A program made the position numbers and the translations under genes. The notes beneath the pieces were generated by a model. That model did not search any database. It was given only the letters and a program-made list of their open reading frames with translations, and was not told the origin of the DNA. This document shows, one piece after another, positions 6,025 through 62,601 of a stretch of DNA of 64,000 nucleotides; the first letter of the stretch is position 1, and each line of letters begins with the position of its first letter. The stretch comes from Octopus sinensis (Eukaryota). The DNA lies in NCBI RefSeq assembly GCF_006345805.1, contig NC_043013.1, positions 46,252,001 through 46,316,000 of the forward strand, in the 5' to 3' direction.

Positions 6025-6469
6025 GGTCTATCTAATGTTTTCGTAAATAAATTCTAGTAAAGAAGAATCCAAACATTTATTCCAACTGGTATGGTAAATA
6101 CGCCTATCTTTTCAAAATTGTTAACACACGTAGACTTTTACTTACAACTGTTCAGCAACTTAACAATAATAGTGAAATGTGATATGATTACACATACACG
6201 CGCGTGCACACACACACACTCACACGAGGTGGTGGTGGTGGTGGTGGTGGAATGAATATAAATTGAAATAAAAAATCTTTCAACTAGTCTGAAGGAGATA
6301 GCAGGCCAGTTACTGTTAAGAGTGAGATAATTGTTTGTACAGTAACATTACTGGTACTAATTTTATCACAGAAGGATAGAGAACACCAACGCTAAAATTT
6401 GGTGCCACACTATTTCTGCCAAAAACCGTGGCCCTTTCAGAACTACTATGGTTAATATAATTAAATCAT

Positions 6470-6830
6470 TCACATGCATGCATGCATACATACATACATA
6501 CATTACATACATACATATGTACATACATACACAAATACATACATACATAAATACATACATACATATGTACATACATACATATGTACATACATACATACAT
6601 ATGTACATACATACATACATACATACATACATACATACATAAATAAATACATACATACATACATACATACATAAATACATACATACATATGTACATACAT
6701 ACATACATACATACATAAATACATACATATGTACATACATACATATGTACATACATATATACATACATACATACATACATAAATACATACATATGTACAT
6801 ACATACATATGTACATACATATATAACGGG
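6470..6830. repeat. (TACA)n tetranucleotide array with TATG interruptions
   Basis: Direct reading. Confidence 0.95.
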
Positions 6831-9006
6831 AAGCTTTATGAAAATAAACAAAAGACGAAGGCAGGTGGAAAACAAACGAACAATTGTATTAGTATGGCGC
6901 TCAGGAAATATAAATAAAACAACATACATACATACATACATACATGCTGGTGTATTACATGTGGAGTGGGTACAAGTACAATCACACAGATTCAGCTACC
7001 AGTTGTAACGAACTAATTCATTTTGTTAATAGGTTTAGGAAAGGCATGACTGCCATCTCTTCCTTATTCAGCTCTCTAAAGCCAATAAGGGTGACCATTC
7101 ATTGGTTTACAAGTGAAACTCCATTTAGAAAAATTAAAACCCTAATTATCCTTATAAGTGTATGGGATAGAAGAGACACAAACCTGTGGCTGCCCTTTCC
7201 CTCTCTCTCTTTCTCACAATACACACACACACTATCCCACCTCCTTGTCCCAGATGTCTGCTTGTTTCCTGACAGGCTCAGAGAGGAGATGCAAGATCAG
7301 ATTACTGCATGATATATTCAAAAACAAGCAATGCTTCATCACCAAACAATTAATACATAATGAGACAGGATCTTTCTAATGAGGTAGGAAGGATTTCATA
7401 TATATTAATCAAGATTAGGCAGAAATAATCAAGATTAAAGAGAAAGACAAACAAGGAATAAATATGAAGGTGTATGTTTGCATGTGGTCACATGGGTGAA
7501 TAAGCATACATGTTAATAAAGTATATACATACATATATAATAAAGTATATACATACATATGTTAATAAAGGATATACATACATACATACATATATATACA
7601 CACACATATATACATAAAGATATATACATGCATACATGATGAACATAAAGAACAGAGATGTTCTGTATTCAAGTAGATAATGATATCTCTTCCAGGTCAA
7701 CATAATTTAAAATTCCTAGCTTATTTCTTTTAGCAGGAGCGAAACTCGTCATTACAAGATATTCTTAAATCCAATCAAAATTACTCAGTAGCTATACATG
7801 TTATTCCAGAAAAAGGATTCTAGAAGAACAAAATAAAAAGGAGCAGAAATTCGTCATGAAAACCTGCATTGTTTTTACCTTCCAACTGAATAGCAGAAAA
7901 TGTTGAAATAATTTCTCCATTGAAATATTAAAATTAAAGTAGATATACAAATAAATTTCTGTTTAACGGGTGTTTTAACATGAAACATAGCCACACAGAG
8001 CAGCAATAGTGAGAGGAGAGGAATTTTAAATTTAATATCAAATTAGCCAAAATATATAACTCAAATTAGGAAAGCGTGTAAAAAAAAGAAACAAATGTAA
8101 AACCAAAAACCCCAAGTACTAGCAGGTGCAGAATTAATTCTATGCAATAAATCTTTAAGAAATGTAACAAAAAAAAAAAAAAAAATGCTTAAATATATTT
8201 ATGACGAAGAATATAGTAAGAAAGTCGAATAATATTTGAATGCAGAAAGGAAATAAATTGTTTAGAAGAAATTTTGGAAAACATTACATTAGAAAATTAG
8301 TTTTTAGTTTTTTTTTTTTTGGTGTTATTTTTTTTTTTAAACGTACACTACATTCGAACTAAAATATAGTGGTCACTTACAAAATAGAATAAATGGAATA
8401 TTTCCATCACAGTACATTTAAACTAGTGAAAATATAACATATTAGCTTTTGGGGCTATTAGAAGCATTAAAGCTTAAGATCTGGTTTCAGTCTAAATTAG
8501 AATATATAACAGTTGGGGCGAGTTTCTCTATGTTTTGTCTGCATTTTGTTTTTTGTTATTTTTTCTTCTTCATTTTTTTCTTTCATATTTCAGATTGAAA
8601 GCAGTTATTTTAAATGATGTCAAATAAAAAATAAAAAAAATATCAAAAAAAATAAAAAACTGGACAATGTAATTTTGAAGAAAAATCAATAAAGTTCTTA
8701 ATTTGATTTTTATTTAAGATGAATATACAAAAGAATTAGATGTTCATTGGTGTAATAAACCTCTAGATGCATTAATGTGGAATTGTATTTGCATCCTATT
8801 TAGATTATATATTCTTACCAAAAGAGAGCCAGCATATACTGGGAAATTACTGCTGCTGCTACTACTACTACTACATTTTGAAACTCAACTGAACCCATTT
8901 TACTGATGTTACAAAAGCCTTTGGAAAGACCAAATGTCATAATTTTCAATTGACCTCCCTCTATTAACGAGAGGTTTATAAGTTATCAGTAATTTAAACT
9001 TTGGTT

Positions 9007-9462: not shown

Positions 9463-9832
9463 CTTTCTTTTACTTGTTTCAGTCATTTGACTGTGGCCAT
9501 GCTGGGGCACGGCATTGAGTTATTTTTCAAGTGTAGTACTTATTCTATTGGTCTGTTTCGCTGAACCACTAAGTTACAAGGTATGTAAACACACCATTTT
9601 GTCAAGTGGTGGTGGATGACAAACACACACACAGACACACACACATAGATACACACACACACACGTGTGATAAACTTCTTGCAGTTTTTATCTTCCAAAT
9701 CCACTCTCAAGGCTTTGGTCAGCCCAAGGCTATAGTAGAAGATACTTTGCCCAAGGTGCCATGCAGTGGGACTGAACCTGGAACCATGTGGTTGGGAGGC
9801 AAGCTTCTTACCGCACAGCCATGCCTGCACCT
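9463..9832 (-). mobile_element. SINE family A
   Basis: cttttacttgtttcagtcatttgactg tail, central (CA)n, head ending gcctgcacct. Confidence 0.85.
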
Positions 9833-10540
9833 ATACATACAAACATATATATATATATATATATATATAGTAAAACTAAAAGGACTTTTCTCATGAAAAT
9901 AGTCACCATAACTCGCAACATAGATTTGTGAAGAACTTTATAACAGAGCATCTAAAGTATTCCAGAGGTGAAAGGGTAATGGTGTTAATATCAGAGGTAT
10001 TTGAACTTTGAACTGAACATGGAATGAAAGTACATCGGCTAATATTTATGACAACAACATGGAGAAACTTAGTACAGATTATCATGTTAATTTATAATTA
10101 ATTATATATTTAAATCAGAACAACAGAATATTGATACAAGATGTAATGTGAAAAAACTTCCTTTAAATATGATGCACAAGTGAAATTATTATATATGAAT
10201 GGTTAGTCCAGTAGATAAGAGGAGATGGGGGAAAAAAATCACACACGAAAAAGAAAAAAAAAATGTCAAAGAAACAGGCTGTCATGCAGGTGAGTGGGTG
10301 AGTGAGTGGGTGAGTGAGTGGGTGAGTGAGTGAGTGAGTGAGAAAGTAAAACAGGAGTGACAGAATTAAAAATGGTAGAACCAGGAGTAGAGAGTGTATT
10401 GATGCTTTTTCGAGGAGAGAAGTTTTTAGAAAGCATGACCACACAAAAAAACAAAAAAAAAACACAGGAAGACTAGGTAAATGTGAGAGACAGATCTTAT
10501 TTAGTATATTCTGCAACCAGTTATAAAAGGTTTGTGTAGA

Positions 10541-12024: not shown

Positions 12025-12223
12025 TACACATACATACATACATACATACATAGACATACATGATAGGCTTCTTTCAGTTTCCATCTACCAAATCCACTCT
12101 CAAAGCTTTGGCTGGCCCAAAGGTATAGTTGAAGACACTTGTGCAAGGTGCTATGCAGTGGAACAGAACCTGAAACCATGAGGTTGGGAAACAAGCTTCT
12201 TACCACACAGCCACACCTGCACC
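11778..12223 (-). mobile_element. SINE family A
   Basis: Colinear with other A copies. Confidence 0.85.
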
Positions 12224-12580
12224 AACAGCCACATTTTTTTCTTTTTTTTTCCCCTATCAATCTCTATCCATCAAATGGCTGAGTTCACCTATTGGATTTA
12301 ATCCCTTTAGGAAGTCACCTCCTCTCAAGGAAAGAAAAAATATACCACAAGGTGCTTACACTAGTGAATACAGACACATATAAATATGCGCATGACATGT
12401 TTCTTCACCGTTTCCATCTAACGAATCTCACATACAAAGCTTTGGTCACTTATTTGCTGACGCAGTCATAAAAGAAACTTGTCATAGGTACCATGCACTG
12501 GGATTGAAACTGGAACTACATGGTTGACAAAGTGAACTTGTTTACAACATTGACACACCTGTGCTCATATATGTATGTAA

Positions 12581-13126: not shown

Positions 13127-13463
13127 CATCATCATCATCATAATTGTTCGACCGTGGTCGAGACAATGGAATTTACTATGTTACGCCAAACTTCACGGTC
13201 CATCATAGAACTACGGAGGTCCTGTTGCTGGATGCCTGTATCCCTGGAGATTACATCAGGGTAGGAGAGTGTGCACCCTCTGGTATCGCGAGCAGATGGC
13301 TTCCAGGGGGGAAGAGTAGAAATTACCTCGTTTTCAGCTCTACAACAATGTCCATGATACAGGTGGTAATTTCCCATATATTTGTACTTTGGTTGGATGA
13401 TGCTTCCACGAGAGATTTTGAGCTCTCATAAGGAGGCGAGTGTAAGTTCCATCCAACCGCCTC
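13127..13463 (-). mobile_element. RTE-X-like LINE 3' fragment with (ATG)n tail
   Basis: ORF track: RRLDGTYTRLLMRAQNLSWKHHPT...YPDVISRDTG...DREVW; flanked by tccagacttat at 13116 and 13464. Confidence 0.8.
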
Positions 13464-15106: not shown

Positions 15107-15530
15107 AGGCGCAGGAGTGGCTGTGTGGTAAGTAGCTTGTGGCAGGAGTGGCTGTGTGGTAAGTAGCTTGCTTACCAACCACATGGTTCCGGGTTCAGTC
15201 CCACTGCGTGGCATCTTGGGCAAGTGTCTTCTACTATAGCCTCGGGCCGACCAAAGCCTTGTGAGTGGATTTGGTAGACGGAAACTGAAAGAAGCCCGTC
15301 GTATATATATATATGTATGTGTGTGTGTTTGTGTGTCTGTGTTTGTCCCCCTAGCATTGCTTGACAACCGATGCTGGTGTGTTTATGTCCCCGTTACTTA
15401 GCAGTTCGGCAAAAGAGACCGATAGAATAAGTACTGGGCTAACAAAAGAATAAGTCCCGGGATCGAGTTGCTTGATTAAAGGCAGTGCTCCAGCATGGCC
15501 GCAGTCAAATGACTGAAACAAGTAAAAGAG
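15107..15530 (+). mobile_element. SINE family A (young), with duplicated 5' end
   Basis: aggcgcaggagtggctgtgtggtaagtagc head present twice; tail gactgaaacaagtaaaagag. Confidence 0.92.
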
Positions 15531-15736
15531 TATTAGGACCCAGTCTAGTATGGAAAATGGAGGTCATAACATTCAAACATTCAAGGAAACTAGGGATAAG
15601 TAATAATCTCTGAACACTTAAAATTTTCTGCTAATCTGTTTACAGTGCTTACGAATATGAAAACTTTCTGCAATATATAGCGATATTTAGTAATTCTAAA
15701 ATGGCTTATTGAAACATAATCATAGTTATTTGGTGT

Positions 15737-16195
15737 GGTATAGGTGCAGACGTGAATGTGTGGTTATGAGACTTGCTTCCCAACCAGGCGGTTTCAGGTT
15801 CAGTTCCACTACACGCCACTTAAAGTAAGTGTCTTGTACTATAGCCCTGGGCTGATTAAAAGCATCATGGGTGTATATGCTAGACAAACCAAAAGAAGCC
15901 CATCACATATATGTGTGAGTGTGTCCCTGTCTGTCCCCTGGTATATATCTGTGTCCTGAAATCACTTGATGGTTGCAAATGAGCAGCAATGTCATGGAAG
16001 CGATGTCACTTGTTTCCAGTCTTTTGTGAAGACCATGGGAAATAGCTTGCTTGGAAACAAGTGAAGTTTGACAACAGTATGGGTGTCTGGCCATAGAAAA
16101 TCTGCCTCAACAAATACAGTCTGACCCATGCAAGCATAGAAAATTGTCTACTAAAACATTAATAATTATGATGATGATGATGATGATATACATAT
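15737..16195 (+). mobile_element. Old composite SINE: A-type head with RTE/C-type (ATG)n tail
   Basis: Head gtgtggttatgagacttgcttcccaacc...; tail acccatgcaagcatagaaaa...(atg)n. Confidence 0.55.
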
Positions 16196-16229
16196 AAAGT
16201 TAATCCAAACATGAAAACACAAAGAGAAA

Positions 16230-16410
16230 ACACAACAACACGAGGACGTGGAACAAATATAGTATTATTGGATGCTCAGGAAGGAAGGGAAGAAGGAGGG
16301 TTTAACGTTTCGAGAGGAGCTCTTCATCAGAAACATAGGAAAAGGAAAGATCCAGAGAAAGGAAGACGGAGGAAAAAAAATAAAATCGCCAACAGTACAC
16401 ACACGGTCAC
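16230..16410 (-). mobile_element. Penelope-like element terminal-repeat fragment
   Basis: Contains aacgtttcgag...gctcttcatcag, the motif characteristic of PLE terminal repeats. Confidence 0.5.
16300..16334 (-). ncRNA. Minimal type-I hammerhead ribozyme motif (predicted)
   Basis: GUUU-CUGAUGA-A-GAG(CUCCU)CUC-GAAAC-GU-U-AAAC: intact core, 4-bp stem I, 3-bp stem II, palindromic ACGU stem III. Confidence 0.5.
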
Positions 16411-16447
<37 letters not shown>

Positions 16448-17481
16448 CCTGTGTGTATGCACTTGAGTGTATGTGTGTGTACACTTGATACTAATTTAAG
16501 AATTTGAAAAATTACATTTTACTAAAAATACAATTTCCTCAATCCAGTATAATTAAAACAGAATCTAGAGCAGAGAAAACACTATAACGACTCTTGCAAT
16601 TTAAACAAAAGCAAAACGCTGAGATAACTCCATACTGAAAGAAAAACGTGTACCGTGAAACTTGAAAAACTCATCACTAATTTCACTTACAACAAATGAT
16701 TTGCTAATTTCAATAACAGAACTAATTTCTCTTAACGGAATTAATTCTTATGTCTCATAATTTTTGTTTCATTTAGACAGAAGATATGAAATAGTCAGAT
16801 TTTAAAAGAACAAGCAAGCCAGCTTAGTTGCTTTGAGGCCACGGATTTATTTATTTATTTATATCTTCCTGTTTTTTTAATGAAGTGCAAGTCAACATAA
16901 ATATTTTTATCATTGAATTTAATTCAACAATAGTGAAATCCATTTACACCAATTCCTGAAAACATTAAGTGAAAGCCAGAGATAAGGCACCCTTCCACTT
17001 TGGTAATGACTAACACTACACACAGAAACAAAAGAACGCAACTTCAAGCCTAATGAATTAAACAAAAGCAACTTTGAATGGCATTGTTACGTCTTCCTCT
17101 GACACTGAATTACTTGACATTATGGCACCTGTTTAGAAAACAGCTAAATCGTTTAGAGAACTTCAATGAATAAAGAATAAAACACAATCGTTTTCAAAAG
17201 TCCACGATGTATCTTTTGTTGATAAAATAATGAAAAGTTTTAATGAATAATATATCCACTTAATCATCGATTTCACAACGTGACACATCTGATTGGTGCT
17301 CTCTGCTTTCTTCAGATATTAACGTGTTTACTATTACTGTCGAAATGCTACATGAACGACATTTTGATGATGCAGCAGAGACATTATTAAATGACATCAA
17401 TCTAACATTCATTGGGTAAGTGTGTATACATGTGCCTCTGTGCACGTGTGTGTGTGTGTGCATGCACACATGCAAAGACAT

Positions 17482-28307: not shown

Positions 28308-28356
<49 letters not shown>

Positions 28357-28492
28357 GACGGGCTTCTTTCAGTTTCCGTCTACCAAATCCACTCACAAGG
28401 CTTTGGTTGGCCCGAGGCTATAGCAGAAGACACTTGCCCAAGGTGCTACGCAGTGGGACTGAACCCGGAACCACACAGCCACTCCTGCGCCT
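28096..28492 (-). mobile_element. SINE family A (young; short internal deletion in head)
   Basis: Colinear with 57417-57826 except for the loss between ggaacc and acacagcc. Confidence 0.92.
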
Positions 28493-41556: not shown

Positions 41557-41786
41557 CTCTACTTTGATGTCGGCTTGGGGTGAAGCACCTGATGAGCTAC
41601 CTGTGTTAGCAGGACTGATGTTACGAGGAGGCGGATGTGTGGCAGGGTTCCATGTAGGAGCATTCACAATGGGAGGTGTGGAATGCAATGTAGGATAAGT
41701 ATTAACAGCAGTTTGATCCCTCACAGTGGCACTGATGCTTCCAGGAGCTGGACTTGATGAACCAACAACTGGACCTTGGAATGCAG
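41557..41786 (-). CDS. NAB: NAB homolog, third coding exon (end of NCD1 plus Pro/Ser/Thr-rich linker)
   Basis: Acceptor ctttatattttcag|CT continues the frame (WVANP-AAFQ); donor GAG|GTAGGC; 230 nt, phase 1-0, no stops: AAFQGPVVGSSSPAPG...SGASPQADIKVE. Confidence 0.85.
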
Positions 41787-43419
41787 CTGAAAATATAAAG
41801 ATTTGTTTTAGGACCTAGATTTAGCAATCATAAAAAACTACAATGCAAAGAAGACTATCAACAAGCAAAATCTCGATAAGTTAATGCAAAAAAACTCTGT
41901 TGCTTTTTATGTGTTAGTGGAACATCTCTGCAATTCCTTGACAGAGAGTTCAAGTCAAATATACAAGTAACAGTTGGACAGTATCAGCCACAAGATTATC
42001 TCTAGTTATGGTTGGCTACTTTTTCTGATAAGCTTTTCTTTTACTTGACTTTTAAATTTTTGGCTGTTAATTTGACTTGTATTTACAGTAGAAATTTTTA
42101 CAATTGCATACTCTATATTAAGCCAAACCAATTTATAATGGTAAAATGATTAACTGCTACCTACAAAGAGCTAACGAAATGTTTTGAAAACAGACTAGTG
42201 GCAACTGTAAGTGAATGGTGGTGGAGGATGTCCAATGAGTTGTTTAGGTTATTGGTAACGTCAGAACTGATGCCACTAAAGCAAATCAATAAAATTAAAA
42301 TGGGCATGAAAATGTCTGAATGAAGTTGCCCCAAGAGACTCTATCCTAAAGAGACTAGAATGGACTTTTGCCAATTCTTGTCAATAAAAAGACACAAAGT
42401 TATAAAGCAATTTATTGGCTAACTTAAAACTTCCATCCAGAAGGAAATTCTATAAGAAAGAATTGTCAGCGATTCTGTCAGTTCTTTAACAATGTTTTGG
42501 AAGAAAGTTTATTGAACCTTATCTTTGGTCGAAATAGAAGTAAGTAGGTAATGGATTGAAAAGTGACTTTTCATATGTTCACTCCAGATGCAATCAATAT
42601 TTTGGCAAGCTTTAAGGTTGTTAAATCTCAAAAATTTGACTGATACTACAGATAAGATGTAAGATATCATTGTTACTAAACACTACAGGAATGGTTTCAA
42701 ATCAGTTATTCTGAATAGAAACTCATTATTGTATAAACAAATTTCTTACTCAATCTCAGGGAATAAAATGGAACAATAATCTTGTAACACATTTATTTAG
42801 CGGAAATGATGATATATAAAGATACCTTATCTTCCTTTTTATGATTATCCTGTGAAGCAGCTTGAACTGGACAAATATATTCAAATGACACCATTTTATC
42901 AATCTAAATTGCCATAATTCACTCTAAATTACTTTATTTTATTTTGTGTTCGTAGCACTTAACTAATAATATACTAAGATGTCCAGCGCTGATGAACTAG
43001 CTTCACTATATCTTAGGACAAACTGGGCTTCATTAATTTAATGAAACTCAAGTTAGACAAAGTAACATTTATATAGCTGTTGTGTTTCTCAAACCAACTA
43101 TCATTCAGCAGCCTTTTTTTTAAATTTTGAGACATAGTCTTGTACAAAGAATCAATTTATCTGTCTATCTATCAATTGCTCTCTCTCTCTCTCTCACCAC
43201 ACACATCTATGATCGGTTTTGTATAGTTTTCTTCAACCAAATTCACTTGCAAGGCAATTGCTGGCCTGGGGCTACAGAAAATACTTACCCAAGGCGCCAT
43301 GCAGTGGGAATGAACTCAAAACTGCATGACTGCAACTCAAACTTTTATATGCTTGTCCAGAAAACAAATAGCAGACTTAGTAAATACTACACAGTTTACT
43401 AACTCATTATACATATAGT

Positions 43420-43682: not shown

Positions 43683-43874
43683 ATATTATATATATATATA
43701 TACATATATACGACGGGCTTCTTTCAGTTTCCGTCTACCAAATCCACTCACAAGAATTTGGTCGGCCCGAGGCTATAGTAGAAGACACTTGCCCAAGGTG
43801 CCATGCAGTGGAACTGAATCCAGAACCGTGTGGTTGGTAAACAAGCTACTTACCACACAGCCGCTCCTATGCCT
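43420..43874 (-). mobile_element. SINE family A
   Basis: Full length, colinear with other copies. Confidence 0.92.
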
Positions 43875-46336: not shown

Positions 46337-46528
46337 ACTCTCTCTTTTACTTGTTTCAGTCATTTGACTGCAGCCATGCTGGAGCACCGCCTTTAGTCGA
46401 TCAAATCGACCCTGGGACTTATTCTTTGTAAGCCCAGTACTTATTCTATCGGTCTCTTTTGCCGAACCACTAAGTGACGGGGACATAAACACACCAGCAT
46501 CGGTTGTCAAGCAATGCTAGGGGGACAA

Positions 46529-46563
<35 letters not shown>

Positions 46564-46727
46564 CGACAGGCTTCTTTCAGTTTCCGTCTACCAAATCCAC
46601 TCACAAGGCATTGGTCGGCCCGGGGTTATAGCAAAAGACACTTGCCCAAGATGCCACGCAGTGGGACTGAACCCGGAACCATGTGGTTAGTAAACAAGCT
46701 ACTTACCACACAGCCACTCCTGCGCCT
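46337..46727 (-). mobile_element. SINE family A (young)
   Basis: Full length. Confidence 0.92.
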
Positions 46728-46728
46728 A

Positions 46729-46848
46729 TACATGTATTAAAGCGCTACTAATAGTTTCATATATTGAGAAAACTCAAACATATTCTTCAGGCGCAAACCA
46801 CACATCATAACGAACTATGAAACTATTAGTAGCACTTTAATACATGTA
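46729..46848. mobile_element. TA-flanked MITE with 33-bp TIRs
   Basis: tacatgtattaaagcgctactaatagtttcata vs tatgaaactattagtagcactttaatacatgta, one mismatch. Confidence 0.75.
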
Positions 46849-46910: not shown

Positions 46911-47224
46911 TCTTCTTCTTCTTCTTACAGCATTCACCCGGAGTGGGTTGAGCTGGCTTCATTCATCCTCAACGCTGCATCTCTCACAAACGCCGACCAG
47001 GCCTGGCAATTTGAGGCTAACGACCGCGTGATCTCCAACCACTCCTTATTCCAGCGGCGAACACCGTAGATATGGGGGCCTAGATTGGGTTCCAGATCAG
47101 CCTTGACTGTCGTCAGCCAGGTTTTTTGTTGTCCACCACATTGCTTTCGCCAACCCTGATTTGGGAGCTGGGGCAATTGCTTCGTAGATGAATTCTCCTG
47201 GTTGACGACGGATGTGTTCAGGGA
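46911..47224 (-). mobile_element. RTE-clade LINE 3' fragment with (AAG)n tail
   Basis: ORF WRKQCGGQQKTWLTTVKADLEP...AWSAFVRDAALRMNEASSTHSG*; 13-bp TSD tgttgaattttct at 46898 and 47225. Confidence 0.85.
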
Positions 47225-47299
47225 TGTTGAATTTTCTATCACGGCTCAGTATATTATATATATTATTTAAAACATTTTGATTAAGCTCCCATGCATCTC

Positions 47300-47863: not shown

Positions 47864-48618
47864 CAGTACAATCTAATGGAAATGATGATGGTAAAAAGTT
47901 ACTATTGTATTTATATTTCTTTGGGGGCTGTAGGCTCCAAAGCTATCATGAAGCAGAAGTGGTAGAAGAATGGAAAGCAGCACTAAGATATATATATGAA
48001 GCCACAAGTAGAGATTTTAACAATAAAAACTGTTTTGTATTCTTGTGTGTTTGTTTACTCAGCTGCTGTATAGTCTGAGGTCATGCAAGCCAAGCCATAT
48101 AAAAAAAAGGCAAGGAAGAAAATAACTGAATGAAAAGTTGCTGATATATATTTTTTTAATATTTTGAGTTTCTGCTTGGGAGAGTGTTTCGTAAAATGAG
48201 AGTTCAGAAAGGAATAATAAGATGAGTACGGGGTTGATCTATACAGAGCAAGGATCCGTGTGATTCAGTTGAGAAAACCAGCATGAAACATGTTTGCAAA
48301 GATTTATATATAAATGATAATAGTATCTAACAAGGTTTTAGAATTTTTTCACAAAGATGTTCAACCTGCTTGTGTATATAGAGACCTTTCCGAAATACAT
48401 GTAGGTACATGTTTATTATAAATCAGGAATATGCCTTATATCTCCCATGTAGTGTCTCTGATAGTGGTTCAGTATCTGATATAAAAATCTAGTTTTCAAC
48501 TGTTGTTATTCATCTTGCTTCTATTAAAACAAACAAAAGAGCTACAGTTCCACGGGAGGAATGATAGTAAATGGATTACCAAGTAAATACTCTACAAGAA
48601 GAAAGCAAATATTCCTAC

Positions 48619-48756
48619 CTGGATTTGCTACCCACTCTTGGAGTGCTTTTTGTAAACGTCTAACATGCAGAGGTTTACTTGCCATGCCTACCAGAGCCAT
48701 AATCTCAAGAAATTCTTCCTCTCCAGCTTCACACAATTGTTGAACATCATCTCCTC
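48619..48756 (-). CDS. NAB: NAB homolog, second coding exon (NCD1 core)
   Basis: Acceptor tttctctctattttcag|GA and donor CCAG|GTAGGA; 138 nt, phase 1-1. Translates (G)[45 protein letters not shown], near-identical to the NAB NCD1 signature. Confidence 0.97.
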
Positions 48757-51291
48757 CTGAAAATAGAGAGAAAGCTTCTTATCATTTTTAAGAGACAAAA
48801 ATTGATTGTTATGGAAAAAAAAAAAAATATGGTGAGATAATTTTGTTTGTTTTACAACACAATGTAAAATAATAGAAAGCAATCAAATGATAAAAAAAAA
48901 AGGCAAAACAATCAAAAGATTATAAGATTCAATCTGAATGGAATATTGGGAGATCAATAAACATTCTGAATTATTTATTGAAACTTTTTCCTAACTGGTA
49001 AATTCACATTGCTTTTGCAAGGTTTTCCCTTTGTTTTTAATTTTTTTTCTTCTAATTTTTAGATATTCACACAGCTTTCTTGTTTGTACATTATACAAGT
49101 GAGAAAAAGTAAATATAAATAAAAATTATATATAAAAAATTCAAAAATAGTAAGAGAAAATATTTAATAATATCAATTCTAATTGTATGATATAACTTCT
49201 TTTTCTAAAGAGACAAAAGGAAGAAGTACAGTTATTGATATTAGACATTTAACACTTTTATTATTTAAATATTGACTCTAGAATAATTCACAGTATTTAT
49301 AAAATCTTTTGTACTGTCAAAACTGTTTGAATTTTTAATGTAAAGTTACTTCACTACAACACTAGTAGCTTTTTATTCAAGTCAAAACATGAATAGTTTA
49401 AAAACAAAACAAAATCAAGGTAAAAGTTCTGTTTTAAAAGAAAACTATTCCAACAAAACTTGCCATCAATATTAGTAATAAAATGAAACAGAAGCAAATA
49501 AGCACCTGATATGAAATGTAAATTAATAAAAACTAAACCGATACCTAAGCCTTTATATCTTTTGCAAGACAACATTTGAAAACATTTAAGAAAAATCAAA
49601 CTTATATGTTATCAAACTAAAACGTGTATTGAACTCTACATCTAAAGAACATGCACTTCCAGTAGTTTTATGTTATTTTTCTGCTGACAATTCTTTTTCA
49701 TTTTCTTTCAAAGTGTGGATATCTTCATTCTATTTCTAAAACAACACAAAAGATTTCAATGATAGAGAAAATATGCTTTTTAAATACTTCAATAGAATTA
49801 TTATTTCATAGAAGCATGAAATGCAGAGTGGAAGCTGTGTTTTCTTTTTTCTTTTTCTTTTTTTTTATTTTTACTTTTTCCTTTTTTTTTAATATTTATT
49901 TATTTATTTATTTAAAAAGTGAATTTTAATTCAAGCTATTTGCCTTCAGGTTAGTGAAGTCTAAAGAGGAGTCTCACCAAACCAACAGATAATGAGCAGT
50001 TAAAAATATTCCATACTTGGCGAACCAATATTTGAAAAGAATATAAAATGTATAAAATGACAGTTATAAAAATGGAATTAAAGAAAAAGTATTAAATTAA
50101 CAACAACAAAAAAAAAGTAAATCCCCTCACTATATATATTTTTTTTTCTCTGTGTTTTGCTCTTATCAAATATTTTGTATTGAAAGTTTTTATTTTATTT
50201 AAGCAGTTTGAAAAGAATATTCTTTTAGCTTGTAAAAAAAAAAGTCTTATTTAGGAAAGATTTATGCTGTATTTTATAGCACATCCAGGTTCAGTTGAAG
50301 TACATGTACATTAAATAGAGGAAAATATAGAGAACTGAAATTAAAGAGATTAAATCGCAAGAAAATATTATAGGTGGAATATCAGTGTAGGAACCAACTG
50401 CATGATGGACAAAAAAAGCATAAACAACAATGGCAAAACAAAAATATGCTAAACTAAAATAAAAAAAATAAAAAAAAAAAAAGGAAAAAAAGATACTATT
50501 AGAGAATTAGACTTGAACTTCATCTATGAAATTTTGCTTTTGGAAAGTAACATCGAGAATACTGTCAAGAATAATGGAAATAGAATTATATGTTTAGGCT
50601 TCAGTTTATTTTTTGAAGTTTAGAAATACTTTAAAAAAAAAAACCTTAATGAACTAAAGACTTTAAAGAGAACTTCCAAACCGACACTTACTGTACCCAA
50701 GAAAAATACATTGGAAAATAGATAGAAATCTGCAAAAATGAGCCATTTCTTTTTCCTTCCTTTTTTTTTTTTTTTTTTACTTTAACCGCCCCCCCCCCCC
50801 CCACCTTTGTATGCACTCAAGATGCCATGAGGCAACTTCAGATTTTTCTATTGCTACGAAGAAGTAAAATGTTCTTGAAGAAAATCTTGAAATGAAACCT
50901 TCGACATATCAGTAGTAGTAGTAGTAGTTTTCATATTGCAACCACAAACATGAATATTTACATTGTTATCTACGTAAAGACTAAGCCAACCCATCTATGT
51001 AATGACAAACACTCAGCTTAGAAAATACAGAAAGATAATGCAATAATTACACTGCACTGCACAATTAAGATAAGGAAACGTTATTGGTGTTTCACACTGT
51101 CCTTTCCATCAATAAGTCCAACTGTGAAAGTATGAGTGAAAGCCATTTTTATCAGCCAAGCAAACTGAGGTGAGGAGGGTTATGTACCTTGCCTATGAAA
51201 ACCCCCACAAAGTTAGTTGTAAATTCAGGACTCCAGGTCGACCGTATGCAAATCTTCAAAATATTGAATGTTACTACTATATGAATAATCA

Positions 51292-55939: not shown

Positions 55940-57416
55940 AAGGAAAAAAAAACAACTAAAGACAAAATTCCAGAGTTGTAAACATCTCAAAAATAAATTT
56001 GAACTGATAAAGAAATAGTCAAAGAAATTTCTTTTACAGTAAAATTGAATACAAATCGTTGTGTCGATTTGGTAAAAAGTTCTCTTAACGATTAAATGGC
56101 TGCTCAAAAATTAGCTCTACCACTGTATTAACAAGCTATACACTACAACAGCAACAACAACAACAAAAGCCTTCTTTGCTACAGGAAGCCATATCTATAG
56201 GCATGCAGGGAGGATAAGTATTGCTAGGTTTAGTTCAGTAAGATTCTGTAGAGAAAACACCAAAATCATTGTAAATCTTATTAAAGATCAGCTTATGATA
56301 TGGTTTCAGTTATGTAAGTAAAAATCAGAAATTAAATATTAAGAATAAAAAAATAAATAAAACTAATAAAAGTGAGTGGCAGAGTTGATTTGATGGGCCA
56401 ACTATATGATGTAGAATTAATCTCATTTTGTAAACAACAAACAAAAACACTGTGTCTAAAGCAATTTCGCAGAAATAAGGAACCCTAGCAATTTTTTGAA
56501 TAAAACATTTTTTCCTTTCATTTTAAGGTAAAATTGAACTCCAGGATTAGAAATTGCAAAGGGACAAGGGAATTGAATTAGAAACTATCTCCTACAGGCA
56601 ACAGTCAAAAAGGGACAACAGATACGGATAGCGCCAATGAAAATATCGGTTATTTAAAATATCGGCTTAAATGAGAATTAAAATTCTTTTACATATTACT
56701 AAGTGACATATTGCAATTCCTGTGAAACTAGCAGCACAAATCAACGAGCATAAATGTTGAAATGTGATTAATTTGTTGAGTAAATAGTTATAAAACAGAA
56801 TCAAGTAAAAACAAAAACGGAAGGGGAAAAAAAGTAGCAGTTACTTCAATTTTTCCCAGAATAGCAAGATAATTAGTAGCATATAAAATAGCTGGAGAAT
56901 TACTGGCTTTAAATTTTTGAGAAGGGAGAAGCTAATTGCAGTTCAGCTACTGTATATATTTTTACCAAACATTGTTTTTAGAGGTTATGTTCTGTGCTAT
57001 GTAAATAAAATAAAATGAAAAAAAAAAAGTCTAGCAAATATGTAAAGAATGAAAGAAATATATTCACAGAAAAGACATCTCGAAGATTCAAAGACATCTT
57101 TGTAAATTACTATAATTATTATTTTTTAAAGAATATTTATTTCATTTTATGTATGTGAAATGCATTGACAATAGATACTGTGTACCTGTATTTTAATAAG
57201 TATTTGAGTGGAATGCTTTATTTAACTTGCTCCACACCCAGGTGAATTAACACTGGGTGCAGTCAAATATGCACATGCATATGTATGTACATACGTGTGT
57301 ATGTATATCATGCAAAATCACACAAAAACGTATTCTGCTACCCACCATATTCATCATAGAAGACTTTTATATCCATCATGGAGTAATAAGCTGTTTATAT
57401 ACTTTTATATACACAT

Positions 57417-57826
57417 AGGCGCAGGAGTGGCTGCGTGGTAAGTAGCTTGCCTACCAACCACATGGTTCTGGGTTCAGTCCCACTGCGTAGCATCTTGGGC
57501 AAGTGTCTTCTGCTATAGCCTCGGGCCGACCAATGCCTTGTGAGTGGATTTGGTAGACGGAAACTGAAAGAAGCCTTTCGTATATATGTATATGTATGTA
57601 TGTGTATGTATATGTTTGTGTGTCTGTGTTTGTCCCCCTAGCATTGCTTGACAACCAATGCTGGTGTGTTTACGTCCCCGTCACTAAGCGGTTCGGCAAA
57701 AGAGACCGATAGAATAAGTACTGGGCTTACAAAGAATAAGTCCCGGGGTCGATTTGCTCGACTAAAGGCGGTGCCCCAGCATGGCCGCAGTCAAATGACT
57801 GAAACAAGTAAAAGAGTGAAAGAGTA
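57417..57826 (+). mobile_element. SINE family A (young)
   Basis: Full length; tail aaagagt repeated. Confidence 0.93.
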
Positions 57827-60058: not shown

Positions 60059-60781
60059 AAAATGCCAATAAATACAAAGCTATAGGTGTTTCACGAAACC
60101 AATCTGAGTTTGTGATTATTTCAGAAAATTTTATTGAAGCGCATAGGTGCGTGATGGGTGGGGGGGGGTCAACGTTTTAGTTAGAAATACAGGAATGAAA
60201 GAATTAAGGGTTTTTTTTTGTTTTGTTTTTTTTTTTAAAATAAGAAATAACAAAATTTCAAAACAATCTGGATACAACAAACTTCAAAATGACCTGACAG
60301 GCGGGGACTATGAATAGATATGGTTTTACAATTTTTATTTTTAAAAAAAAGCTCGCCAAAACTGAATGTGTCATGAGCTGTCAAATATTGCATATGTGCT
60401 TGTACATTGTGTTTGCACACACACACACAGAAGGAGACAATGTTGTAGATGAGCTAAGAAGCAGTTGTATCCACTCTTTATAATAACCTATAAAACTTTT
60501 GTCCTATGTTATATCCTGATATTTATTTATATTTTTCTCATTTACAGCTTCGTTTTCTCCGAAATACTTTAAATTCCACACTTTTCACACTGAGAAAAGT
60601 TTCAAAAGTAAAAATTAGCCAAGTCGTTTTCGAAAATAGATATTTACTAGAAGAAGCCAGTCTAGTTTTAATGAACAATAGAATTTTTTTGCTAAATATT
60701 TCAATCTTATAAAATTAGGATATAATTGAAAAGTTCTTAAAGACAAAACAACATTGAAGTAAAAATGTAAATAGTATTCAC

Positions 60782-60881
60782 CTTGAGCAATAAATGTATC
60801 ATAATATTGTAAGAGGTTTGCACGTTGTAAAACTCGATATAGTTGCCATTCTGATGCATTCGTAGGCTGTGATGACGTCAT
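60782..60881 (-). CDS. NAB: NAB (NGFI-A-binding protein/EGR corepressor) homolog, first coding exon in window (start of NCD1)
   Basis: Translates MTSSQPTNASEWQLYRVLQRANLLQYYDTFIAQ(G), matching the NCD1 start of NAB1/NAB2 ([24 protein letters not shown], recalled). Start in gccATG context. Donor CAAG|GTGAAT at 60781 (phase 1). Upstream acceptor ttccttcactttttag|G puts the exon start at 60897. Confidence 0.93.
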
Positions 60882-61038
60882 GGCATCCAAGTATTCCCTA
60901 AAAAGTGAAGGAATAGAATAATGTTAGAGCATTGCTGAATAAGAAATCTCAAGAGGTTAGCAAGCCCCAAACAAATACTTGATAATATTTTTGGTTTCAC
61001 TTCTGCTTTTTATGCTATAAACAATGGGAGAAATAGCG

Positions 61039-61905
<867 letters not shown>

Positions 61906-62601
61906 AGATATACAGAGATAGAGAGACAAAAAGTAAAGCTCTGAAAGAAGAAAGCTGTTAATAAATGTGATGAGCTATGAAGCCAGAGCTTAGAACATAG
62001 AGCAGATTTGTCATTTGATAATACACAATGTAATTCTTTTAAAGATCATGAAATAGTCAACAGACATCTAATATCTATGATAAAGGAAATTATTTCAATT
62101 GTTTTTTGAAAAATACTGCTCAATCTGCTACATTTAATACAACCAATTCCATAAGTCCAGATAAATCTAAAATATTAATTTGGGTATTGAAAAGAAATAT
62201 GCAAGAATTTTAATACATACATACATACATACATATATATATGTATGTATGTATATGTGGTTGCAACAATTTAAAAAAAAAAACATTTTAAATTAAAAAT
62301 ATGATCGATAGATTTGAGATATTTATAAAGTTAACATTTATAAGCGATCTTTTTTCGACTCTCTTCATATTGTAGGCAAGCAAACAACTTTAAGATATTA
62401 CAATGGTAAATTTTTTTAATAATCTGCAGTAATGGAAAATTTACCCCATTTAAATGAAACTTACAAATCTGAAACAAATTCTGATGCAAATACTCAGATT
62501 TCTTGGTAATATATTTGACAATTCTTGGAAATGTTGAGAAAGAGAGACCCAACAAGGATTGCGGTAGTGACTAATACTAAAAATAGTGGCAGTATATACT
62601 A

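What the first reader, a model, noticed from the sequence alone, without database searches (positions are those of the whole stretch)
16300..16334. Minimal hammerhead ribozyme motif, sense to the NAB pre-mRNA
The minus strand reads GUUU CUGAUGA A GAG-CUCCU-CUC GAAAC GU U AAAC. All core nucleotides are present (CUGANGA, GAAA, GUH), with a 4-bp stem I, a 3-bp stem II, an extra A after A9 and a palindromic ACGU stem III. This is the layout established for minimal, dimer-dependent hammerheads of Penelope-like elements. It is transcribed in the active orientation inside the large NAB intron, so it could in principle cut the pre-mRNA. A lone minimal copy may be weak or inactive; activity is not shown.
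Basis: partly seen in the sequence, partly recalled or inferred. Interest (0 to 1): 0.72.

Follow-up and report, generated by a model that had tools for sequence, protein, structure and literature searches.

The report
Lone minimal hammerhead motif, octopus intron
A 35-base sequence inside a giant intron of the octopus NAB gene really has the full layout of a Penelope-type minimal hammerhead ribozyme. It is a single, weakly folding copy with no partner, so it is most likely a dead transposon relic or a coincidence, not a working RNA cutter.

Summary
The letters are exactly as reported (minus strand 16334..16300). They form a complete type-I minimal hammerhead: CUGAUGA, an extra A, G10.1-C11.1, a 3-bp helix II, GAAA, loop-less palindromic ACGU, U17 and a 4-bp stem I. 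The window is the 5' part of an Octopus NAB gene on the minus strand. The motif lies, in sense, in an intron of at least 41.5 kb.

A generic minimal-hammerhead descriptor matches by chance about 0.004 times per window (about 156 per genome). This exact architecture matches only about 9e-6 times per window (about 0.4 per genome). Public metagenome contigs hold real hammerheads of the same build, one of them inside a canonical Penelope-like element.

Against activity: there is no second copy in the window, no family copy could be found, and no RT or GIY-YIG remnant was detected in the stop-free segments scanned within about 10 kb. Helix II is almost never formed in the predicted ensemble (P=0.016, against 0.66-0.996 in the five intact real examples). 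The double-hammerhead fold is +0.7 kcal/mol.

The Rfam negative is uninformative, because a bona fide PLE hammerhead is missed too.

Verdict: probably a solo, degraded PLE-type relic (about 0.55) or chance (about 0.4). Self-cleavage of NAB pre-mRNA is very unlikely (about 0.03). The orthologous site could not be fetched.

The parts
16300..16334 (-). Complete type-I minimal hammerhead-like motif (35 nt)
   Evidence: Read directly. It is the sole hit to strict and relaxed descriptors and to covariance model R1 (37.9 bits; this score is largely circular).
16331..16334 (-). Stem I 5' strand GUUU (2.4-2.1). It also pairs, together with C3, to the core GAAAC in the predicted MFE fold.
16323..16330 (-). 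Core C3 U4 G5 A6 U7 G8 A9 (16330-16324) plus the unpaired extra A (16323)
   Evidence: The extra nucleotide is a reported PLE min-HHR hallmark.
16312..16322 (-). Helix II GAG/CUC (3 bp, G10.1-C11.1) with loop CUCCU. A fourth pair would be a C.U mismatch.
   Evidence: Ensemble probability of this helix is 0.016.
16304..16311 (-). G12 A13 A14, then the loop-less palindromic helix III A15.1 C15.2 G16.2 U16.1, then H17 = U (16304). The predicted cleavage is between 16304 and 16303.
16300..16303 (-). Stem I 3' strand AAAC (1.1-1.4)
16197..16391 (-). About 195-nt CT-rich segment, unique within the window, that carries the motif. It is a candidate body of a heavily 5'-truncated element (inferred, not shown).
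   Evidence: No second copy in the window. Sequence read. The geometry is compatible with real PLE 3' ends.
16392..16480 (.). Compound microsatellite (CA)n(TA)16(TG)n immediately 5' of the segment (context)
   Evidence: It is the source of spurious miRNA hits.
15734..16196 (.). Flanking interspersed repeats 3' of the segment: a (CAT)6-headed repeat (about 16196-15940) and a tRNA-like SINE copy (15938-15734) (context)
41557..41787 (-). NAB exon (aa 122-199 of XP_052829809.1). Its GT donor opens the intron that contains the motif.
   Evidence: tblastn 98.7%; donor GAG|GTAGGC
48617..48757 (-). NAB exon (aa 76-122, NCD1 second half)
60780..60899 (-). NAB exon (aa about 36-76, NCD1 first half)

Best explanation
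The motif is a solitary, degraded copy of a Penelope-like-element (PLE) type minimal hammerhead. It was most likely left in the third mapped intron of the Octopus NAB gene by a heavily 5'-truncated PLE, or by a related non-autonomous element. In a live PLE such hammerheads sit in the pseudo-LTR about 100-160 nt from the element's 3' end. They work only as double hammerheads, formed between two copies on one tandem transcript. Here only one copy exists. Its helix II has shrunk to 3 bp, and its 5' strand GUUUC prefers to pair with the catalytic GAAAC. It is therefore transcribed passively as part of the NAB intron and does nothing. Shown: the motif, its architecture, its gene context, the existence of real PLE hammerheads of the same build, the absence of a partner, and the poor predicted fold. 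Inferred: descent from a PLE, and catalytic inertness.
For: (1) Under an order-1 Markov null the exact architecture is expected about 9e-6 times per window and about 0.4 times per 2.7-Gb genome. That is about 400-fold rarer than a generic descriptor hit. None of the 8 generic null hits had the three hallmarks. (2) Those hallmarks are the ones listed for genuine PLE min-HHRs in PMC4209133. (3) A pattern scan of metagenome contigs returned low-GC, eukaryote-like contigs with the same build and a short 4-5 bp helix II. Stem I was not in the pattern, yet it pairs and covaries across independent families. L016 is a canonical PLE: RVT_1 at E=5e-8, a GIY-YIG core with the CxC cysteines read (Pfam itself reported no GIY-YIG family for that ORF), and the hammerhead about 680 nt past the ORF and about 100 nt before the element's end. 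(4) The prior is reasonable. Octopus genomes contain many elements classed as Penelope (PMC13282606, PMC8967140). The giant squid genome has 235 Rfam hammerhead_1 loci (PMC6962438). Most min-HHRs in animal genomes are solo copies from truncated PLEs. (5) Inertness: no second copy within 47 kb upstream or 16 kb downstream. P(helix II)=0.016, against 0.66-0.996 in the five intact real examples. The double-hammerhead energy is +0.7 kcal/mol, against -4.5 to -13.7 in those five. Single min-HHR copies show no detectable cleavage in vitro.
Against: No family membership was demonstrated. The 195-nt host segment has no other copy in the window. An ORF spanning it has no relative among 5.8 billion predicted proteins (a weak test). 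No RT or GIY-YIG remnant was detected in the stop-free segments scanned on either strand within about 10 kb. The only PLE clade explicitly documented in Octopus in the papers I read is Naiad, which lacks hammerheads. Helix II is shorter than in any intact real example, while all 11 core positions are intact; that is an odd pattern for neutral decay unless ascertainment explains it. The flanks are CT-rich low-complexity DNA, unlike the complex pseudo-LTR flanks of the real examples. The Markov null may understate chance in hairpin-rich real DNA. The orthologous site could not be examined.
Confidence: 0.55

Rival explanations
1. Pure coincidence. Unique, CT-rich, low-complexity intronic DNA happens to contain an imperfect hairpin (GUUUC...GAG / CUC...GAAAC) followed by GUUAAAC, and this reads as a minimal hammerhead. 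It has no transposon ancestry and no function.
For: Generic minimal-hammerhead matches are expected about 150-340 times per octopus-sized genome. 58% of chance hits have a 3-bp helix II, as here. The predicted MFE fold is the simple hairpin, not the hammerhead. No repeat family, PLE coding remnant or second copy could be found. The field discards min-HHR hits that cannot be grouped into a family or tandem context, and regards relaxed minimal-motif hits as mostly false positives. The finding was picked post hoc by a reader scanning an unknown number of windows.
Against: The specific combination of extra nucleotide, G10.1-C11.1 and loop-less palindromic helix III occurs in only about 1 in 400 chance hits, about 0.4 per genome. 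In eukaryote-like metagenome contigs, the same 20-nt core pattern is overwhelmingly associated with real hammerhead families.
Confidence: 0.4
2. A functional intronic self-cleaving ribozyme. It cuts NAB pre-mRNA co-transcriptionally, either as a monomer helped by cellular factors or by pairing with another copy beyond the window. This would tune NAB expression, by analogy with the conserved intronic hammerheads of amniotes.
For: All catalytic core nucleotides and a cleavable GUU triplet are present, in the sense orientation, inside the transcript. The authors of PMC4209133 speculate that cellular factors may boost min-HHR activity.
Against: No dimer partner in 64 kb. Helix III cannot close as a monomer, because ACGU has no loop. 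P(helix II)=0.016, and the double-hammerhead conformation is +0.7 kcal/mol, against -25.5 for an alternative duplex. There are no helix I-II tertiary-contact loops. Single min-HHRs are inactive in vitro and even dimers are slow. Bimolecular pairing of two nuclear pre-mRNAs through 4 bp is implausible (inference).
Confidence: 0.03
3. A solo monomer of an animal non-LTR retrozyme: a small, non-autonomous, circRNA-forming repeat of about 170-400 nt that carries a type-I hammerhead.
For: The host segment is about 195 nt, within the retrozyme size range. Molluscs carry thousands of such elements (mussel about 5000; PMC7229834). A 2026 preprint links animal retrozymes to PLEs and finds dispersed solo monomers.
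Against: There is no tandem repeat at the locus. Rfam Hammerhead_1, built on canonical type-I ribozymes, does not score it. The extra nucleotide and the loop-less helix III are PLE-min features, not the canonical retrozyme build.
Confidence: 0.05

Closest known systems
Minimal hammerheads (min-HHR) of Penelope-like elements (Cervera & de la Pena 2014, PMC4209133; Lunse, Weinberg & Breaker 2017, not readable here)
   Same: Type-I topology; full CUGANGA / GAAA / UH core; unpaired nucleotide between A9 and 10.1; G10.1-C11.1; loop-less palindromic helix III (ACGU) that can pair only between two copies; 4-bp helix I; occurrence as a solo copy. The real examples recovered here (L012, L016, L024, L032) have the same build.
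   Different: Helix II is only 3 bp (4-5 bp in my real examples, 6-8 bp in the published Schistosoma and Drosophila families) and is not formed in the predicted ensemble. No pseudo-LTR, RT/EN ORF, tandem copy or family could be shown. The flanks are low-complexity.
Canonical metazoan type-I hammerheads of non-LTR retrozymes / satellite DNA (newt, Schistosoma Sm-alpha, mussel, coral; Rfam RF00163)
   Same: Type-I topology; very short palindromic helix III that calls for dimers; small host unit.
   Different: No loop 1 / loop 2 tertiary contacts, no tandem array, shorter helices I and II, and not detected by Rfam at E<=10 in 66 nt.
Conserved intronic hammerheads of amniotes (RECK, CTCL introns; cited in PMC6155905)
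   Same: Sense orientation inside a large intron of a protein-coding gene.
   Different: Those are full-length ribozymes with tertiary contacts, active as monomers and ultraconserved. None of this is shown here, and the fold is poor.

Membership tests
Hammerhead ribozyme (catalytic core, any type) | Conserved core C3 U4 G5 A6 N7 G8 A9 ... G12 A13 A14 ... A15.1-U16.1, H17 not G | tested here: met
   Read directly: CUGAUGA, GAA, A15.1/U16.1, H17 = U.
Hammerhead ribozyme (catalytic core, any type) | Three helices I, II and III that can form around the core | tested here: inconclusive
   Stem I (4 bp) and helix II (3 bp) can be drawn, but their ensemble probabilities are 0.002 and 0.016. Helix III cannot close within one molecule.
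Hammerhead ribozyme (catalytic core, any type) | Site-specific self-cleavage giving 2',3'-cyclic phosphate and 5'-OH ends | not testable with these tools
   Needs in vitro transcription or RNA end mapping.
PLE minimal hammerhead (min-HHR) | Unpaired nucleotide between A9 and 10.1; G10.1-C11.1; palindromic 15.2-16.2 with no or minimal loop 3 | tested here: met
   against the criteria. The joint chance rate is about 9e-6 per window.
PLE minimal hammerhead (min-HHR) | Stable helix II (6-8 bp in the published families; 4-5 bp in the real examples found here) | tested here: not met
   3 bp only. P(helix II)=0.016, against 0.66-0.996 in the five intact real examples L012, L016, L022, L024 and L032.
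PLE minimal hammerhead (min-HHR) | Location in a PLE pseudo-LTR (RT + GIY-YIG ORF nearby) or in a recognisable truncated PLE copy | tested here: inconclusive
   Pfam found no RT or EN domain in the stop-free segments scanned: minus strand 1-22.9 kb (segments of at least 30 aa); plus strand and upper minus strand to about 27-31 kb (segments of at least 55 aa). A regex screen found no signature. A short truncated copy would carry no ORF, and no octopus PLE reference was available.
PLE minimal hammerhead (min-HHR) | Membership in a within-genome consensus family with covarying stems | not testable with these tools
   There is no access to Octopus genome DNA beyond this window. The gene loci are too long to fetch. 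The protein-space proxy found nothing.
PLE minimal hammerhead (min-HHR) | A second copy in tandem or close by (<50 kb) to form the active dimer | tested here: not met
   No second motif in the window by strict or relaxed descriptors or by the covariance model with filters off. This covers 16 kb on one side and 47 kb on the other.
Canonical type-I hammerhead / non-LTR retrozyme (Rfam RF00163) | Match to the Rfam covariance model; loop 1 - loop 2 tertiary contacts | tested here: not met
   No hammerhead family at gathering threshold or at E<=10 in 451 or 66 nt. The same is true of a bona fide PLE hammerhead, so this excludes only the canonical class.
Canonical type-I hammerhead / non-LTR retrozyme (Rfam RF00163) | Host unit of 150-450 bp arranged in tandem repeats | tested here: not met
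   TRF finds only microsatellites near the motif. Self-BLAST finds no repeat of the unit.

The most novel reading that the evidence does not exclude
The motif is a domesticated or still-competent hammerhead that cleaves the NAB pre-mRNA inside its giant intron, perhaps with a partner copy beyond the window or with protein chaperones. That would be the first intronic self-cleaving ribozyme tied to a named gene in a cephalopod. A milder version: it is the first sighting of an HHR-bearing PLE lineage with an unusually small helix II in Octopus, where only hammerhead-less Naiad PLEs have been described.
Probability: 0.03. Interest if true: 0.6.

Novelty: new member of a known kind. Interest (0 to 1): 0.22.

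Why it matters
If it is a PLE relic, it is one more of the many thousands of solo minimal hammerheads scattered through animal genomes, and of little consequence for NAB. The modest value is twofold. First, it hints that octopus genomes hold hammerhead-bearing PLEs or retrozymes, which I did not find described in the papers I could read. Second, the work gives a practical calibration: Rfam does not detect PLE mini-hammerheads; generic descriptors hit by chance about 150-340 times per genome; and the three hallmarks, extra nucleotide, G10.1-C11.1 and loop-less palindromic helix III, cut that to about 0.4. Only if cleavage were shown in vivo would it matter for gene regulation.

Tried and rejected
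(1) Rfam scans gave no hammerhead. I rejected this as evidence after a bona fide PLE hammerhead also scored nothing.

(2) I first leaned towards 'chance' on the generic null. I revised this after the architecture-specific null. An exact enumeration of that probability timed out, as did the order-3 Markov run.

(3) Orthologous site. Exact look-ups of ORFs next to or spanning the motif were not on record. NAB isoform X8 of both species was not indexed. The longest isoforms of O. sinensis, O. bimaculoides and O. vulgaris are indexed, but their gene ranges (195-221 kb) are too long for DNA to be returned.

(4) Contigs carrying the NAB exon (L001-L011) are from distant animals. Only the exons align, at 79-86%.

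(5) A protein-space search with the ORF spanning the motif found no relatives.

Pasted stop-free segments gave no domains.

(7) (TA)n adjacency as a PLE signature was set aside. The cited preference is for Naiad PLEs, which lack hammerheads.

(8) The covariance-model score of 37.9 bits is not used as independent support, because the training set was retrieved with a pattern derived from this motif.

(9) Lunse et al. 2017 (PMC5785218) is not held, and PMC4209133 has no text supplements. So the helix II length distribution in published families is known only from the main text.

Full report
OBSERVATION. In standard hammerhead numbering this is a type-I arrangement:
- stem I 5' strand (16334-16331);
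- C3-A9 (16330-16324);
- one unpaired A (16323);
- helix II GAG/CUC with G10.1-C11.1 and a 5-nt loop (16322-16312);
- G12 A13 A14 A15.1 (16311-16308);
- C15.2 G16.2 U16.1 (16307-16305), which with A15.1 makes a loop-less palindrome ACGU;
- H17 = U (16304);
- stem I 3' strand AAAC (16303-16300).

It is the only such motif in the window by a strict descriptor, by a relaxed one that also allows the U3-A8 core variant, and by a covariance model run with filters off.

CONTEXT. Two stop-free minus-strand segments encode the NAB NCD1 domain (Pfam PF04904, E=2e-46). The 624-aa Octopus bimaculoides NGFI-A-binding protein homolog (XP_052829809.1) maps as three exons. They lie at about 60899-60780, 48757-48617 and 41787-41557, all on the minus strand with canonical AG/GT boundaries. 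Residues 200-624, which include NCD2, have no match in the window. Pfam finds nothing in the minus-strand stop-free segments below 22.9 kb. The annotated gene spans 195, 221 and 214 kb in O. bimaculoides, O. sinensis and O. vulgaris. The three species match the exons equally well, so only the genus is certain.

Locally, reading the minus strand 5' to 3', the layout is:
- a compound (CA)n(TA)16(TG)n microsatellite (16480-16392);
- about 195 nt of CT-rich DNA, unique within the window, with the motif in the middle (16391-16197);
- TATATGTATAT plus (CAT)6 heading an old interspersed repeat;
- a tRNA-like SINE copy (15938-15734).

IS IT MORE THAN CHANCE? A generic minimal-hammerhead descriptor (stem I at least 4 bp, helix II at least 3 bp, helix III at least 2 bp, optional extra nucleotide) hits shuffled or Markov sequence 0.004-0.008 times per 64-kb window. 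That is about 150-340 times per 2.7-Gb genome. On that basis a lone hit is unremarkable. But the motif also carries the three features that Cervera and de la Pena list as emerging from real PLE mini-hammerheads without being in their descriptor: a nucleotide between A9 and 10.1, G10.1-C11.1, and palindromic 15.2-16.2 (PMC4209133). Conditional sampling of 17 million anchors puts that exact architecture at about 9e-6 per window, about 0.4 per genome. The estimate rests on 6 hits and an order-1 Markov null, so it is good only to within a few-fold, and real DNA is richer in hairpins. So coincidence is possible but no longer the comfortable default.

DO REAL RIBOZYMES OF THIS BUILD EXIST? The published PLE families have a long helix II: 6-8 bp. 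To see whether short-helix-II versions occur, I scanned public metagenome contigs with CTGATGANGAGN{3,7}CTCGAAACGT, which returned 21 loci.

The GC-rich loci, and those with G at position 17, have no stem I and look like chance hits in microbial genes. The low-GC, eukaryote-like loci fall into several families with an extra A or U, a 4-5 bp helix II, ACGU and H17 = C, U or A. One example is CUGAUGA-A-GAGC-UAAC-GCUC-GAAACGU-C. Stem I was not in the pattern, yet it pairs and covaries between families.

L016 is a canonical PLE. It has an RT (RVT_1, E=5e-8). It then has an ORF with the GIY-YIG core ...NIYMLKCPCGLAYVGKT...EH read; Pfam itself reported no family for that ORF. The hammerhead lies about 680 nt after the ORF and about 100 nt before the three family copies diverge. 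A 5'-truncated copy of only 200-300 nt would therefore still carry the ribozyme. That is compatible with the octopus geometry, where the motif lies about 100 nt from the end of the unique segment.

Octopus genomes contain many elements classed as Penelope. The giant-squid genome paper reports 235 Rfam hammerhead_1 loci. The only PLE clade explicitly described in Octopus in the papers I read is Naiad, which lacks hammerheads and prefers (TA)n targets. For that reason I do not count the adjacent microsatellite as support.

WHAT ARGUES AGAINST A LIVE RIBOZYME.
(i) No partner. Strict and relaxed descriptors and covariance model R1 find no second copy, even a degenerate one, in the 16 kb downstream or the 47 kb upstream. 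The next best hit scores 13 bits and lacks helix II and GAAA.
(ii) No element. Pfam found no domain in the stop-free segments scanned on either strand within about 10 kb. A motif regex screen found no RT or GIY-YIG signature. No other copy of the host segment exists in the window. An ORF spanning it has no relative among 5.8 billion predicted proteins (a weak test).
(iii) Fold. As a monomer, GUUUC pairs with the catalytic GAAAC (MFE -5.0 kcal/mol). The stem I + II structure is worth -0.6. P(stem I)=0.002 and P(helix II)=0.016. The double-hammerhead conformation evaluates to +0.7 kcal/mol, against -10.0 for two folded monomers and -25.5 for an alternative duplex. Calibrated on the real examples, helix II forms with P=0.66-0.996 in the five intact members (L012, L016, L022, L024, L032), and their double hammerhead is -4.5 to -13.7 kcal/mol. 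The visibly decayed family member L017 has a 3-bp helix II that still forms (P=0.978), but its double hammerhead is as poor as the octopus one, at +9.1.
(iv) Literature. A single min-HHR shows no detectable cleavage and dimers are slow. Workers in the field accept hits only with family, tandem or tertiary-contact support. They regard relaxed minimal-motif hits as mostly false positives.

THE RFAM CHECK. No hammerhead family matches at gathering threshold or at E<=10, even in a 66-nt search. The bona fide PLE hammerhead of L016 gives the same null result, with the same spurious C/D-box hits. So this test excludes only the canonical type-I class with tertiary contacts. It does not exclude the PLE mini class.

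WEIGHING. Take N as the number of intact real min-HHRs in an octopus genome.
- The hallmark trio favours 'real' by roughly 200-fold over a generic chance hit.
- The 3-bp helix II favours chance by roughly 10-fold. It is seen in 58% of chance hits and is rare or decayed among real ones.
- A non-Markov genome may raise the null several-fold.

'Real' then wins if N exceeds about 100. That is typical of invertebrates with HHR-bearing PLEs, which have thousands, but it is unverified for Octopus. I therefore give:
- about 0.55 to a solo, degraded PLE-type (or retrozyme-type) relic;
- about 0.40 to coincidence;
- about 0.03 to a functional intronic ribozyme.

Under the first two, which together carry nearly all the weight, the practical conclusion is the same: no effect on NAB pre-mRNA is expected.

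NOVELTY AND INTEREST. PLE mini-hammerheads and their solo relics are well known and extremely numerous, so this is at most a new member of a known kind. Interest is low (0.22). It is raised slightly by the lack of any description of hammerhead-bearing PLEs in cephalopods in the papers I could read, and by the calibration results above.

The decisive tests need the Octopus assemblies or the bench, and could not be run here: copy number and family structure of 16197-16391 in Octopus genomes, alignment of the orthologous intron, in vitro cleavage of monomer and dimer, and RNA end mapping at 16304|16303.

Noticed in passing
window 41557-41787, 48617-48757, 60780-60899 (minus strand): Three exons of an Octopus NAB (NGFI-A-binding protein) gene with canonical AG/GT boundaries. 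The exon for aa 1-35 and all exons after aa 199 lie outside the window. The gene spans 195-221 kb in three Octopus assemblies.
   Followed up: yes
window 15734-15938, 15142-15337, 9639-9836, 12061-12233, 43702-43859, 46521-46731, 57415-57589, 28349-28472, 71-231: About ten diverged copies (69-74% identity) of a SINE-like repeat with a tRNA-like head and an internal TA/TG microsatellite. The 31-nt head GCAGGAGTGGCTGTGTGGTAAGTAGCTTGTG is tandemly duplicated at 15111-15170.
   Followed up: partly
window ~15940-16196 (-), ~58.8 kb (+), ~22.5-23.6 kb, ~19.6 kb: A second interspersed repeat family, headed by a (CAT)n tract and often preceded by TA-rich microsatellite. In translation it is recognisable as 'HHHH-LTSVFHASMGWT...'. 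The copy next to the motif is old (69% identity to another copy over 81 nt).
   Followed up: partly
window 16392-16480: The palindromic compound microsatellite (CA)n(TA)16(TG)n folds as a long hairpin. It produces a string of spurious miRNA-family hits (mir-3149, mir-297, mir-1277 and others) at the permissive Rfam threshold, all far below gathering scores.
   Followed up: yes
window ~38.9 kb (-), 46937-47245 (-), 13141-13425 (-): Fragments that look like non-LTR (LINE) retrotransposon ORF2: an RT box stretch and two typical C-terminal tails. These were read by eye from translations. Pfam found no domain in the 13141-13425 segment, and the other two were not submitted to Pfam.
   Followed up: no
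window 60957-61929 and 6366-6995: Long tandem arrays with about 12-nt periods (translated as SIYL... and MYVC... repeats). The first lies immediately upstream of the first mapped NAB exon.
   Followed up: no
L016 (metagenome contig MDSP01002983.1), oriented coordinates 3-1551 ORFs, hammerhead at 2228: A canonical Penelope-like element: RT (RVT_1), then a C-terminal GIY-YIG with a CxC core (read by eye; not called by Pfam). A mini-hammerhead lies about 680 nt past the ORF and about 100 nt before the element's end. It is followed by an ORF that looks like the C-terminal part of a hAT transposase (by eye only; Pfam found no family for the one neighbouring ORF tested). L015 and L018 are further copies.
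   Followed up: partly
L012, L016, L017, L032 hammerheads: In these real mini-hammerheads RNAfold prefers an alternative helix, in which core nucleotides CUGAU(G) pair with (C)GU plus the start of the 3' stem I strand (for example CUGAUG/CGUCAG in L012 and L017), over stem I, while helix II stays formed. This recurring competitor may matter for how the dimer is assembled.
   Followed up: no
L013, L021, L028, L031 (GC 0.65-0.68) and L023/L029, L025/L030: Identical pattern matches with identical flanks recur in GC-rich contigs without stem I or with G at position 17. They are presumably a conserved stretch of microbial genes that mimics the hammerhead core, and are a ready-made false-positive set for such scans.
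   Followed up: no
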